DNA of 54,314 nucleotides, filler included, from Sluysia triapertura (lineage: Eukaryota), in NCBI GenBank assembly GCA_046118255.1. It is 4 parts of 4 records of this genome, joined end to end, with 100 filler letters (N's around TTAATTAATTAA, not from the genome) between each part and the next. Parts side by side here need not be neighbours in the genome. Positions count along the whole stretch, not along the records: positions 24,209 to 40,037 come from JBJNIA010217363.1; 3 more parts are not named here. One strand, written 5' to 3'. Shown piece by piece: positions 33,897 to 36,875 of this stretch. Numbering within the stretch: the first letter of the stretch is position 1; every line of letters starts with the position of its first letter. The notes under the pieces are model-generated. The model worked only from the letters and a program-made list of their open reading frames with translations. It was not told the DNA's origin and made no database searches. The position numbers and the translations under genes were made by a program.

Positions 33897-34316
33897 TTGT
33901 GTGATTATGATCAATTTAAATCTATACTTAATCAATTTGATGTTAATGATGATCGAATGGAATTCGAAAATAATGATACACTTAAAACATCAACAAAAGA
34001 TTTTGAGTTAAACTTAATTAATCCCAAAGAATACAAAAATACTAATTCGTGTAAAACTGATAAAAATGAAGACTCAACATACGACACTCAAATTAAAGTT
34101 TTGCATATGAAATTAAAATTAGAAGCGGAAAAAATTATTAAATGGAAAAGTGAAATTGAAAGAGAAATAGCTGAAAAAACAAAAAAGTTAAAAGAATCGG
34201 AACGAATTACTGATAGTCTAAGAAATTCAAATTTAGAATTACAAATGCGTCAAGAGAATATAAGTTTAAACTATCAGGAAGAAATTGATATTAGAATTGA
34301 CATAGAAAAGAAAATA
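33897..34316 (+). CDS. SYCP1: SYCP1 (synaptonemal complex transverse filament) N-terminal conserved coiled-coil fragment
   Basis: LHMKLKLEAEKIIKWKSEIEREIAEKTKKLKESERITDSLRNSNLELQMRQENISLNYQEEI aligns without gaps to the conserved SYCP1 motif KLYKEAEKIKKWKVSTEAELRQKESKLQENRKIIEAQRKAIQELQFGNEKVSLKLEEGI. First ATG is at 33957. No further SYCP1 sequence follows. Confidence 0.85.
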
Positions 34317-34357
34317 GTTATTTCGCAACTTAATTTTTTGAATTAACGATGTTACAG

Positions 34358-36875
34358 AAAGTTGAAGATGTAATTGATGCATTATTTGAGAGCAACTTCA
34401 CAAATTATGAAATCGATTCAAATTATATCACTGGAGATACTACGAAGCATTTCTTTAATTTGTTGTCAACATTATTGGTTAAAGATGTCCATTTTAGTGT
34501 GCAAAATAATATAAATATTATTTTAAGGAAATTGAATGAAATCGATAGCACTAATGTAAATAATCATGCCAAAAACGCGTTTTGACCATTAGCAAAAATA
34601 CTAAAAAGCTGCCATAATCACGAAAACGGTTTTTAATGACTATGGAAATTCGTCATTGTTTGCTATGAAAATATTATCATTTATATTATCTCATTGTCAA
34701 ACATTAACAAAAGATCAACTGAAAATACTTTATCAATTTTTATTTATTTTACCATCTGGTTGCGTTTTAAGTGGAAATAAGAAATTGATAAAAGCAGTTA
34801 AAACTATACTTCCAAAAATAAATAAAAGTAACTCAAATTTCTTGAAAATGAAAGTTCAAGCACTATTATTTGTAGGGCTTTATTATAATATCAAAACGGG
34901 ATCCGATAATGTGGTTTATCGTGATTCAGTATTTGATTACATAAAATTATGTATTTATTTTTCCTATTCTAAATTCATTATTTAAAGTTTGTGTAAAAAC
35001 ATCTGCGTTTAAAGAAGTGTTACCTCTTATAACAAAAATGGTTCTAAGAGCATCAGAAAAGCATTTCTTAATATTAATTGATCATTGAGAATTTGTCATT
35101 TGCATTTAAGTAATTGTGGAGAGACTTGTTAAAAGTTTTTCATAACATTTATCATCACGAACAGAATCATTAAGATTCCAGTCGTCTGAATGTATTTCAA
35201 GTTTAGTTAAATATGTGTCAGATTATAACATAATTGTAACAATTTCCGATATTTTGTTAGATAAATTAATTCAAATTGGTTCAGAAAAAATTACACATTT
35301 AGAAACCCGGCAAAATATTTATGCATTATTAGGAAACATGGCCAGAGAAGTAGAATTAGTTGATTATTCAGCAAAAATAACAGTCCTTGATAATATTGTT
35401 AAAAAATCTTTAAATTTACTAAATAAAGAATCATCGGAATCAACATTAAATATAATTTTAAGTACTATTGAAAAGTGGGCTATATTAACATCGGATAATA
35501 TTCCCGTCATTATAATGGACTATTTTCATACGATTGTTAGCACAAAATTGAAATCTGCCAACAAGCTTCATTACCTTCAATTTATTAATAATTGTTGTGA
35601 TAAGACTATAAAGTTATCATGTATAACACCTTTGATAACACCTTTTAAGACATTTATAACTGAATATGCGAAAAACATATCAAGTTTATCATCATTATAT
35701 GAAGTCTTACCATTAATAGACTTATTGTTGCGTTATACTATTGAAGTAGAAAATAATTATGATTATGAATCTTTGAAAAGCAATCAGATTTTAGCAATAA
35801 TTGGTTTTAAAGGAAAAAGTGAAAATTCGAAATTATTATCAGATAATTTTCTGAAAACATGTCCTAGTAGTTTATTGAAAACATATATTTCTATTGTGAA
35901 ATACCTATTGGTTCATTATTATGATTTTGTATCTAATTCACCAGAACACTTAAAATTAATTCTGATTTCTTTATTTAATTGTTGTCTACATAATGATTAT
36001 GTCTTGATACGTAAAGAAGCATTAGATTTAATAAAAAGTCTAGTTCGAAATTCAAATGGAGTTGAAATAGTTGAATTTTATGTGCATCATTTGTCTCAAA
36101 TAAATTTGACTAATTCGAATGGCTTGTTATCATCATGGTTTTGGCCACTAGGGGATAATTTCAATGATTTACATGATATTTATGATTTAGAAAGTTTAAG
36201 AAGTTTTGTACACCGTTTACAACAATTTTTAAACACTTTATTTTCGCTCTCATGTAAAACGAATGCAATATTATCGCATAAAATTAGTAATGCTGATTAT
36301 AGTATAATGGATATGAACTTTCCTGAACATTGGACCACAGAAGCAAGAGCTAAGATATTATTTCAAGCTTTAAAACCATTGAATCAATATGTTTTAGGTT
36401 AGCTTTTGTGTTTTATTTAATATTTGATAAATTCAAACAATTTTTGAAACTATTTAAATGTTATAATTAACCCTTTGTGGTGCCATTTTATTTCACAACT
36501 TTTATTTCTATTGAATCCTCTTAGGTCCTACTTAATTTCAGCAAAAACACAAAATTTTCACAATTAAACGCCTGACTCAAAAAAACATTCAAATCGAATT
36601 TAAATTATTTATTAATTTAATTACATTTATGTTATATTTAAGTAATATTTATAAATTGCAATGTCGGGGCTTCCCCGACAATGGACCGCAAAGGGTTAAC
36701 AAAATTTTTTATCTTTCATCTGTTTATAAATTATAATTATTTTTACTTAGTAAACTTTTATCCAAACTTATGGGCGGATTATTCCAGCAACTTGTTAGAT
36801 CACATTGATGATTTAGTAAAGTTTCATCAAAATGAAATTATTGATTTGATTGTGCGTCAAAATTATGAAGATGAA
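34358..36875 (+). pseudogene. GCN1: GCN1 (eIF2-alpha kinase activator, HEAT repeats) N-terminal ~quarter, intron-containing and disabled
   Basis: Colinear GCN1-like blocks: GNSSLFAMKILSFIL, VLSGNKKLIKAV, FKEVLPLITKMVLRASE, IGSEKITHLETRQNIYALLG, LNKESSESTLNIILSTIEKW, LSDNFLKTCPSSLL, IRKEALDLIKSLVRNSNG, YPNLWADY. Introns at 34951-34987 and 36398-36750. Stops at 34583 (TGA) and ~35143 (TAA), plus frameshifts. Similarity fades at ~37050. Confidence 0.85.
36471..36695. mobile_element. piggyBac-type MITE (225 bp) in the GCN1 intron
   Basis: TTAA on both sides (36467-36470 and 36696-36699). TIRs CCCTTTGTGGTGCCATT / AATGGACCGCAAAGGG. Subterminal palindrome TGTCGGGG-CTT-CCCCGACA. Confidence 0.88.

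What the first reader, a model, noticed from the sequence alone, without database searches (positions are those of the whole stretch)
33897..36875. SYCP1::GCN1 chimera joined in frame by a predicted 41-nt intron
Seen: the SYCP1 conserved N-terminal coiled coil ends at ...DIEKKI (34316). It is followed by GTTATT...TTACAG (34317-34357, 41 nt, the same size class as other introns here), and removing this fuses it in phase 0 to KVEDVIDALF..., close to the start of a GCN1-like sequence. The fused frame is open from ATG 33957 to TGA 34583-34585 (~195 aa). The SYCP1 part has no disablements, while the downstream GCN1 part does. Known: this SYCP1 region mediates head-to-head assembly at the synaptonemal-complex midline, and GCN1 is an unrelated ribosome-bound HEAT protein. 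Inference: a DNA-level shuffle (GCN1 introns are retained) made a new gene under an SYCP1 5' end. It could encode a truncated SYCP1 head without the DNA-binding C-terminus, a possible meiotic modulator, or it could be a dead chimera.
Basis: partly seen in the sequence, partly recalled or inferred. Interest (0 to 1): 0.72.

Follow-up and report, generated by a model that had tools for sequence, protein, structure and literature searches.

The report
Multi-copy SYCP1–GCN1 chimeric pseudogene copy
A piece of the meiotic zipper gene SYCP1 really is joined to the front third of the ribosome-sensor gene GCN1, but this locus is one broken member of a family of about ten or more such copies, and the proposed 41-base intron that would fuse them has no support.

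Summary
Positions 33957-34316 encode the SYCP1 N-terminal head (Pfam SCP-1 E 6e-9; human SYCP1 crystal fragment E 3e-7), with both head-to-head residues conserved. Positions 34349-36875 line up in order with residues 49-759 of a GCN1 N-terminal protein (P0001; long exon E 6e-55). Removing 34317-34357 does give a 195-codon open frame.

The fusion reading is weak:
- The SYCP1 frame ends at TAA 34344-46.
- Two bases later, ATG 34349, inside the "intron", opens the GCN1 frame.
- In another genomic copy a 33-nt GT..AG intron follows that same CAG, so there CAG is an exon end, not an acceptor.
- 11 of 26 nearby GT..AG pairs also join the frames.

New point: short-read contigs cover the SYCP1 and GCN1 parts at about 120-285x, against about 18x for the flanks. 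There are at least 10 variant contigs, and a diverged copy carries the same junction. So this is a dispersed unit of about 2.3-3.3 kb that was amplified after the fusion.

This copy has four stops and two frameshifts between 34583 and 35145. Differences from its paralogues are 29 nonsynonymous to 6 synonymous, which looks neutral. No RNA data exist. Verdict: a real chimera, most likely dead here. How it arose is unresolved.

The parts
33879..34343 (+). Stop-free SYCP1-derived frame. The first ATG is at 33957 and the frame ends at TAA 34344-34346. It holds the end of the non-helical N-terminus and the whole alpha-N-end head of the coiled coil.
   Evidence: Pfam SCP-1 E 3.8e-9, residues 53-144 matching profile 54-148 of 787. 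Human SYCP1 chains 6f5x/6f62 at E 3e-7.
34101..34148 (+). Alpha-N-tip head-to-head motif (L-HMK-L-KLEAEKIIKWK). The leucines align with human V105 and L109, and EAEKI.KWK is conserved.
   Evidence: Residue-by-residue alignment. The role of V105/L109 (mouse L102/L106) is taken from PMC10588951.
34317..34357 (+). It holds the SYCP1-frame stop (TAA 34344-46) and the GCN1-frame ATG (34349-51). Most likely this is junction sequence plus GCN1 leader and first three codons, not an intron.
   Evidence: table 5c shows a paralogue with a 33-nt GT..AG insert directly after 34357.
34349..34582 (+). GCN1-like segment 1 (frame 2), starting at its own ATG. Residues 27-78 match P0001 residues 49-100.
   Evidence: (E 2e-4).
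34583..34585 (+). In-frame TGA inside conserved GCN1 alignment. Other copies read TTA (Leu).
   Evidence: alignment. One search shows 34584 G>T in all contigs laid there. No exact contig of this copy covers the site, so the G rests on the assembly alone.
34630..34636 (+). Frameshift (one extra T in a T-run) between frame 2 and frame 0.
   Evidence: In one search table 4, one paralogue lacks one base at 34634 (depth 20.9), and the window's form is backed by the remaining depth of about 29.
34632..34950 (+). GCN1-like segment 2 (frame 0), matching P0001 from residue 117 to about 236.
34945..35145 (+). GCN1-like segment 3 (frame 1). It is reached by a second frameshift near 34950 and carries stops at TGA 35086-88, TAA 35107-09 and TAA 35143-45. 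It corresponds to the Pfam GNC1_N domain of P0001.
   Evidence: The piece 34945-35085 hits GNC1_N at E 0.02, positions 27-56. P0001 hits GNC1_N at E 2.4e-17, residues 226-349.
35146..36397 (+). Long open GCN1-like exon (418 stop-free codons), matching P0001 from about residue 320 to 727.
   Evidence: (E 6.2e-55, 31% identity). Atlas features point to large alpha-solenoid proteins.
36398..36750 (+). Retained phase-1 intron (GTTAGC...CTTAG). It holds a later insertion, a 225-nt MITE at 36471-36695 flanked by TTAA.
   Evidence: The P0001 alignment resumes in another frame at 36751. MITE depth is about 19,000.
36751..36875 (+). Last recognisable GCN1-like exon (P0001 from about residue 728 to 765), followed by donor GTTAGT at 36876. 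Nothing GCN1- or SYCP1-like follows up to 40037.

Best explanation
The locus is one diverged and disabled copy of a dispersed repeat unit of about 2.3-3.3 kb, present at roughly ten or more copies in this AT-rich metazoan genome. The unit arose once, when a 5' fragment of SYCP1 (the N-terminus plus the alpha-N-end head, about 130 codons) was joined to the 5' part of GCN1 (a short leader, its own ATG and about 760 codons). It was amplified afterwards. In this copy the two reading frames are separated by a stop codon and two bases. The GCN1 part is broken by four stops and two frameshifts, and the sequence differs from its paralogues in a neutral pattern. It therefore most likely makes no functional fusion protein, and the 41-nt 'intron' is a chance GT..AG across the junction. 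Shown: the identity of both halves, the real junction, the multi-copy state with unique flanks, and the disablements. Inferred: that this copy is non-functional, and how it arose. I favour copying from a partly spliced chimeric or template-switched transcript, or capture by a mobile element, but neither is demonstrated.
For: SYCP1 head. GCN1 N-terminal part. TAA 34344 and ATG 34349 lie inside the proposed intron. Multi-copy state: the flanks 32500-33500 and 37176-37342 sit at depth 17-21, while 34003-34670 sits at 120-285 and 35339-36173 at 119-276. Up to 10 distinct variant contigs cover one site, and single-copy-depth paralogue contigs are about 8-10% diverged. The junction is shared by a diverged copy (34243-34463, 17 differences) and by an exact contig (34268-34490). 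Only one copy lies within the 15.8-kb piece, so the family is dispersed rather than a short tandem array. Another copy carries 33-nt and 35-nt GT..AG inserts after 34357 and 34421 that this copy lacks (table 5c). Listed paralogue differences are 29 nonsynonymous to 6 synonymous, and 14:1 in the long exon. The in-frame GT..AG is not special.
Against: The six disablements all fall within 34583-35145, and none falls in the 1254-nt stretch that follows. The chance of no stop there under neutrality is 0.01-0.17, so constraint or gene conversion on part of the unit is not excluded. Only 40 of 101 variant sites were listed, and no full paralogue sequences could be retrieved, so the dN/dS estimate is crude. 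The run holds only 72% of the window's sampled words, and the TGA at 34583 has no exact contig over it. No poly(A), target-site duplication, terminal inverted repeats or Helitron ends were found, so the amplification mechanism is open. The depth summed from contigs is not an exact copy number.
Confidence: 0.6

Rival explanations
1. The locus is a transcribed new gene in which the 41-nt intron is spliced, giving a 195-residue protein made of the SYCP1 head fused to about 75 residues of the GCN1 N-terminus. It could modulate synaptonemal-complex assembly.
For: The frame is open after removal of 34317-34357. The 41-nt size is close to the 33- and 35-nt introns seen in a paralogue. GTT donors occur at the two GCN1-like introns here, GTTAGC at 36398 and GTTAGT at 36876. 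The head-to-head motif is intact.
Against: No RNA evidence exists. 11 of 26 neighbouring GT..AG pairs also join in frame. The acceptor CAG is codon 3 of the GCN1 ORF and is an exon end in another copy. Differences from paralogues look neutral. The intact 360-nt exon is expected by chance.
Confidence: 0.1
2. The product is the SYCP1 head alone. The 129-codon ORF from ATG 33957 to TAA 34344 is translated from this copy and/or its paralogues, and the GCN1 part serves only as a 3' untranslated tail. Many copies of a free alpha-N-end head could compete with full-length SYCP1 at the midline.
For: The ORF is intact and covers the equivalent of human residues 101-176, the fragment that was crystallised as a head-to-head assembly. 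The unit is amplified.
Against: Of the eight listed differences in this exon, 5 are nonsynonymous and 3 synonymous, so there is no sign of constraint. The promoter is unknown. The unit's left border lies within about 100 nt of the ATG, next to a high-copy AT-rich repeat. No RNA data exist.
Confidence: 0.1
3. This is the true SYCP1 gene. Its first coding exon splices to distant SYCP1 exons beyond the piece, and a GCN1 fragment has inserted into its first intron.
For: The exon ends at a GT (34317), and SYCP1 homology stops there.
Against: The SYCP1 exon is itself multi-copy, and the same SYCP1-GCN1 junction occurs in a diverged paralogue. Nothing SCP-1-like lies in the 5.7 kb downstream. The introns seen here are 33-353 nt.
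Confidence: 0.07
4. A long SYCP1-GCN1 fusion is rescued by several small introns that skip the disablements. Examples are 34556-34607 (52 nt), 34949-34985 (37 nt), or a single 626-nt intron at 34556-35181. In that case the damaged middle has been 'intronised'.
For: All disablements cluster in 570 nt, and the next 1254 nt are open. Reading the sequence by eye, GT..AG pairs in compatible phase exist. The middle also has lower paralogue depth, 33-62.
Against: Compatible GT..AG pairs are common by chance in this sequence. The skipped parts are homologous to coding sequence of P0001, including its GNC1_N domain. In the long exon, 14 of 15 listed differences are nonsynonymous. No RNA data exist.
Confidence: 0.05
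5. Assembly artefact: two unrelated loci were joined by the assembler.
For: The run holds only 72% of the window's sampled words.
Against: An exact 223-nt short-read contig spans the junction, and a diverged copy spans it too.
Confidence: 0.02

Closest known systems
SYCP1 (Pfam PF05483 SCP-1), transverse filament of the synaptonemal complex
   Same: The alpha-N-end head is present. The hydrophobic positions equivalent to human V105 and L109 are both Leu, and the EAEKI.KWK motif is conserved.
   Different: Only about 130 of roughly 900 residues are present. There is no long coiled coil and no C-terminal chromosome-binding end. The fragment is multi-copy and is joined to GCN1 sequence.
GCN1, the stalled-ribosome sensor (Pfam PF24993 GNC1_N and the GCN1 HEAT-repeat families)
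   Same: The sequence is collinear with residues 49-759 of a GCN1 N-terminal protein, P0001, which carries GNC1_N. The features are those of an alpha-solenoid.
   Different: Only the first ~760 codons of a protein that I recall (not checked here) as about 2,600 residues are present. The segment equivalent to GNC1_N is broken by a frameshift and three stops. The later HEAT regions that I recall as binding the ribosome, GCN20 and GCN2 are absent.
Chimeric retrogenes/retropseudogenes made by template switching during LINE reverse transcription (PMC2104539; review PMC5470649)
   Same: Two unrelated gene transcripts are fused head to tail. The 3' partner starts about 32 nt before its own ATG, as expected if copying ran to the 5' end of its message. 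Two tiny introns are precisely absent. The copies are dispersed with unique flanks.
   Different: One intron and a further donor are retained. No poly(A) tail or target-site duplication was found. The GCN1 part is truncated at its 3' side. Multi-copy amplification is not typical of a single retrocopy.
Gene-fragment capture and amplification by DNA transposons (Helitrons, PMC4778049; Pack-MULE/CACTA elements, PMC1947982)
   Same: Fragments of unrelated host genes, including intron sequence, sit side by side and are amplified to many dispersed copies. Such units can yield chimeric transcripts.
   Different: No terminal inverted repeats, no 5'-TC...CTRR-3' end with a hairpin, and no transposase or Rep-helicase sequence were seen in the piece. 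The unit borders could not be defined from one copy.

Membership tests
SYCP1 (PF05483) | Conserved N-terminal alpha-N-tip/alpha-N-end head-to-head motif | tested here: met
   Pfam SCP-1 scores 35.6 bits against a cut-off of 23. Human SYCP1 6f5x matches at E 3e-7, with Leu at the V105 and L109 positions and EAEKI.KWK conserved (PMC10588951).
SYCP1 (PF05483) | Long central coiled coil (profile positions about 150-787) and a C-terminal chromosome-binding end | tested here: not met
   The match stops at profile position 148 of 787. No SCP-1 hit appears in any downstream open stretch up to 40037.
GCN1 | GNC1_N domain (PF24993) | tested here: inconclusive
   The relative P0001 has the domain at E 2.4e-17. 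The window's equivalent segment is broken. Its largest piece hits at E 0.02 and 15.1 bits, below the 26.3 cut-off, but at the right profile positions. Homology to P0001 across the domain is clear.
GCN1 | Full-length HEAT solenoid, about 2,600 residues by my recollection, including the GCN1 HEAT and C-terminal HEAT families | tested here: not met
   The alignment ends at about P0001 residue 765, at 36875. Nothing GCN1-like follows in the remaining 3.1 kb.
GCN1 | Uninterrupted reading frame | tested here: not met
   There are four in-frame stops and two frameshifts between 34583 and 35145.
Chimeric retrogene (template switching) | Parent introns are absent | tested here: inconclusive
   Two GT..AG inserts of 33 and 35 nt, present in another copy, are precisely absent here (table 5c). 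However, the intron 36398-36750 and the donor at 36876 are retained.
Chimeric retrogene (template switching) | 3' poly(A) tail and flanking target-site duplication | tested here: not met
   No A-run of 8 or more and no flanking direct repeat beyond 10 nt of AT-rich sequence were found. The unit borders are imprecise, so this test is weak.
Transposon-captured gene fragments (Helitron / Pack-type) | Many dispersed copies with unique flanks | tested here: met
   Depth is 120-285 across the unit against 17-21 in the flanks, with at least 10 variant contigs. Only one copy lies within 15.8 kb.
Transposon-captured gene fragments (Helitron / Pack-type) | Recognisable element termini (TIRs, or TC...CTRR with a 3' hairpin) | tested here: not met
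   Searches found none. The only clear TIR element is a separate MITE inside the intron.

The most novel reading that the evidence does not exclude
Some members of this amplified family are intact and expressed in the germline. They would produce free SYCP1 heads, alone or fused to a GCN1 N-terminal stub, that retain the head-to-head motif and compete with full-length SYCP1 at the midline of the synaptonemal complex. That would make the family a multi-copy, possibly selfish, modulator of synapsis and recombination. The copy in this window would be a decayed relative.
Probability: 0.08. Interest if true: 0.75.

Novelty: new member of a known kind. Interest (0 to 1): 0.35.

Why it matters
If only the conservative reading holds, this is a clear case of exon shuffling followed by amplification. 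It is useful mainly as an annotation warning, because gene finders may call a false 'SYCP1-like' or 'GCN1-like' gene at ten or more places in this genome. It also flags an active fragment-copying process in this lineage. It would matter more if any copy is expressed. The fragment carries exactly the SYCP1 module that drives midline assembly (L109-type interface; PMC10588951) and lacks the chromosome-binding end, which is the layout expected of a competitive inhibitor of synapsis.

Tried and rejected
- **Pfam and PDB searches of the GCN1-like pieces.** Pfam gave only sub-threshold noise apart from GNC1_N at E 0.02, and phmmer against PDB gave nothing for the long exon or for P0001. The GCN1 assignment therefore rests on P0001 and its Pfam domain.
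- **Word-index protein search with the SYCP1 ORF.** No hits, and the length window excludes full-length SYCP1.
- **Exhaustive search of the protein library.** It found no self-hit and only one true relative. This genome's proteins are therefore not in the collection, and paralogues could not be fetched through protein look-ups.
- **RNA evidence.** The one run that holds the sequence is not on record as RNA and covers the intergenic flanks evenly at about 18x, so I treated it as genomic DNA.
- **Terminal repeats, TSDs, poly(A) and Helitron ends.** Nothing beyond chance AT-rich matches.
- **Rfam.** Nothing relevant, and no spliced-leader RNA.
- **An 18-mer shared by 34318 and 39063.** I considered it as a possible spliced-leader relic, but 7 of 100 shuffles give two hits, so I dropped it.
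- **Alternative genetic code as the cause of the stops.** Rejected. 418 consecutive codons carry no TAA, TAG or TGA, other copies read TTA at the TGA site, and two breaks are frameshifts.
- **Joined protein.** Only its frame was checked in a script, and each exon was searched by reference.
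Full report
**Setting.** The piece (24209-40037) is very AT-rich, with 19-33% GC. It carries a metazoan-type C2H2 zinc-finger exon on the minus strand. Protein-coding open frames are rare, so the cluster of + strand frames between 33879 and 36875 stands out.

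**The SYCP1 half.**
- The frame is open from 33879, its first ATG is at 33957, and it matches Pfam SCP-1. The score is E 6.3e-9 for 33957-34316 and E 3.8e-9 for 33879-34343, with residues 53-144 on profile positions 54-148 of 787.
- phmmer against PDB finds only human SYCP1 N-terminal fragments as significant hits: 6f5x at E 3.3e-7 and 6f62 at E 1.1e-6.
- In that alignment, the two positions that form the head-to-head interface (human V105 and L109, equivalent to mouse L102 and L106; PMC10588951) are both leucine here. The EAEKI.KWK motif is conserved.
- Homology ends at about 34310-34316. No SCP-1-like sequence occurs in any open stretch further down.
- This is therefore an SYCP1 head fragment, not an SYCP1 gene.

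**The GCN1 half.**
- Pfam and PDB did not recognise the pieces directly.
- Protein-language-model features of the long exon pointed to large alpha-solenoid proteins in general.
- An exhaustive HMMER search of 1.8 billion representative proteins found one true relative, P0001. It is 834 aa and matches at E 6.2e-55 with 31% identity, query 11-393 on residues 342-726.
- P0001 carries Pfam GNC1_N ('Stalled ribosome sensor GCN1 N-terminal') at E 2.4e-17, residues 226-349. It comes from a 2.8-kb contig with an uninterrupted ORF.
- tblastn of P0001 on the piece shows one collinear series:

| Window positions | Frame | P0001 residues |
|---|---|---|
| 34427-34640 | 2 | 49 to ~116 |
| 34632-34950 | 0 | 117 to ~236 |
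| 34951-36396 | 1 | 246-727 |
| 36751-36875 | 0 | ~728-765 |

- The first 26 residues from ATG 34349 precede the aligned part, against 48 residues in P0001. ATG 34349 is therefore at or near the native GCN1 start.
- Between 36397 and 36751 lies a phase-1 intron (GTTAGC...CTTAG). It holds a TTAA-flanked 225-nt MITE.
- After 36875 comes a donor (GTTAGT), and then nothing recognisable.

**Disablements.** Measured against P0001, this copy has six breaks:
- an in-frame TGA at 34583-85;
- a one-base frameshift in the T-run near 34634;
- a second frameshift near 34950;
- three more stops at 35086 (TGA), 35107 (TAA) and 35143 (TAA).

The last four fall in the segment equivalent to the GNC1_N domain. 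From 35146 to 36399 the frame is open for 418 codons.

**The junction and the proposed intron.**
- However, the SYCP1 frame itself runs on to TAA 34344-46. Two bases later, ATG 34349 starts the GCN1 frame as ATG-TTA-CAG-AAA.... The supposed acceptor 'TTACAG' is thus codons 2 and 3 of GCN1.
- Short-read contigs show a paralogue at single-copy depth (15.9) that carries 31 extra bases at 34357/34356. Together with the repeated AG, these form a 33-nt GT..AG unit directly after that CAG. The same depth value marks a 35-nt GT..AG unit after 34421 (table 5c). Both inserts contain in-frame stops or break the frame unless they are removed, so they are introns.
- In that copy, CAG 34355-57 is therefore the end of GCN1 exon 1, on the donor side. 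The window's copy lacks these two introns precisely.
- Of 26 GT..AG pairs around the junction, 11 give stop-free in-frame joins. An in-frame candidate is therefore expected by chance.
- I conclude that the 41-nt intron is unsupported, though it cannot be excluded without RNA.

**Multi-copy nature (new).** One public run holds the stretch (72% of sampled words). When its contigs are laid on 32500-37500 at 90% or higher identity, the picture is as follows.

| Region | Summed depth |
|---|---|
| Flank 32500-33500 | 17-21 |
| Flank 37176-37342 | 18 |
| SYCP1 exon (34003-34336) | 217-285 |
| First GCN1 part (34337-34670) | 120-195 |
| Damaged middle (34671-35338) | 33-62 |
| Long exon (35339-36173) | 119-276 |
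| End of long exon (36174-36340) | 17.5 |

- Single variant sites are covered by up to 10 distinct contigs. Paralogue contigs at single-copy depth differ from the window by about 8-10%, for example 15 differences in 193 nt and 17 in 221 nt.
- At most listed sites, 85-96% of the depth carries the other letter. The window's copy is therefore an outlier within a fairly large family.
- An exact contig (223 nt, no differences) spans 34268-34490, and a diverged one spans 34243-34463. The junction is thus real and older than the amplification.
- Only one copy lies in the 15.8-kb piece.
- Together this describes a dispersed unit of about 2.3-3.3 kb with unique flanks. Its left border is hidden by a high-copy AT-rich repeat at 33502-34002.

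**Selection.**
- I classified the 35 listed differences that fall in the coding frames. Overall, 29 are nonsynonymous (including TGA>TTA) and 6 are synonymous. The split is 5:3 in the SYCP1 exon and 14:1 in the long GCN1 exon. This is what neutral change gives in such AT-rich codons. The sample is partial, because only 40 of 101 variant sites were shown.
For a 360-nt exon, the chance of acquiring no stop at 2-5% lineage divergence is 0.27-0.60.
- The 1254-nt open stretch is mildly unexpected (0.01-0.17). All six disablements lie within 570 nt, and the same region shows the lowest paralogue depth.
- Possible reasons are an older or faster-evolving middle, gene conversion of the outer parts by intact copies, or, less likely, residual constraint or 'intronisation' of the middle. 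I could not separate these.

**Origin.**
- Features that fit an RNA-mediated origin: the GCN1 part starts about 32 nt before its own ATG; two tiny introns are precisely missing; and the copies are dispersed with unique flanks. This matches copying from a partly spliced chimeric transcript, or template switching between two messages during reverse transcription (known cases: PMC2104539, PMC5470649).
- Features that fit DNA-level capture by a mobile element: one intron and a further donor are retained; the GCN1 part is truncated at its 3' side; and there is no poly(A) or target-site duplication (known cases: Helitrons, PMC4778049; Pack-type and CACTA elements, PMC1947982).
- No element termini were found. 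With one copy in hand, the borders cannot be fixed, so the mechanism stays open.

**Caveats.**
- The run may come from the same sample as the assembly, so it is not fully independent.
- It lacks 28% of the window's sampled words. No exact contig covers the TGA at 34583 or the 34990-35015 region. The extra T near 34634 is backed by a depth of about 29.
- Summed contig depth is only a rough guide to copy number.
- No RNA run holds the sequence, so expression is untested.
- The joined exon model was not searched or folded as one protein. Exons were searched separately by reference.

**Verdict.** The SYCP1::GCN1 junction is real. This locus is most likely a dead member of an amplified chimeric family rather than a single new in-frame gene. 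The residual interest lies in whether any sister copy is intact and expressed in the germline.

Noticed in passing
window 36467-36699: A 225-nt MITE (36471-36695) flanked by TTAA on both sides. Its terminal inverted repeats begin CCCTTTG, and it has an inner GC-rich hairpin at 36664-36679. It is inserted in the GCN1-like intron. Contig depth is about 19,000 against about 18 for single-copy sequence, which suggests roughly a thousand copies. The TTAA target is the piggyBac type.
   Followed up: partly
window 33502-34002: A short AT-rich repeat directly upstream of the SYCP1 ORF, at contig depth 11,000-55,000. Many copies begin or end at about 33639, 33773, 33813 and 33856. It hides the left border of the chimeric unit.
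   Followed up: no
window 29525-29625: A 101-nt near-perfect hairpin (ACTCCAAT...ATTGGAGT). It gives a weak Rfam mir-559 match (34 bits against a gathering score of 95, E 0.002). It is more likely a palindromic MITE than a microRNA gene.
   Followed up: no
window 34318-34335 and 39063-39080: The 18-mer TTATT(T/A)CGCAACTTAATT occurs twice, once inside the junction segment just upstream of the GCN1 ATG. 7 of 100 shuffles also give two hits, so chance is not excluded. The idea that it is a spliced-leader relic was not tested.
   Followed up: partly
window 27301-28017 (-): A 239-codon open stretch encoding at least four C2H2 zinc fingers with Krueppel-type linkers, followed by an N/S/Q-rich tail. 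It is the only other clear coding exon in the piece.
   Followed up: no
window 33845/36408: One contig (depth 9.9, about half the single-copy depth) joins 33845 to 36408, skipping 2562 nt that hold nearly the whole chimeric unit. Only 21 letters lie on the shorter side, in AT-rich sequence. It could be an empty-site allele or a chance match.
   Followed up: no
L001 2640-2680: The ORF of the only detectable relative (P0001) ends by reading into CACAG|GTCGGT, a likely splice donor. The 834-aa 'protein' is therefore probably a truncated model of a longer GCN1, with no intron in its first 2.5 kb.
   Followed up: no
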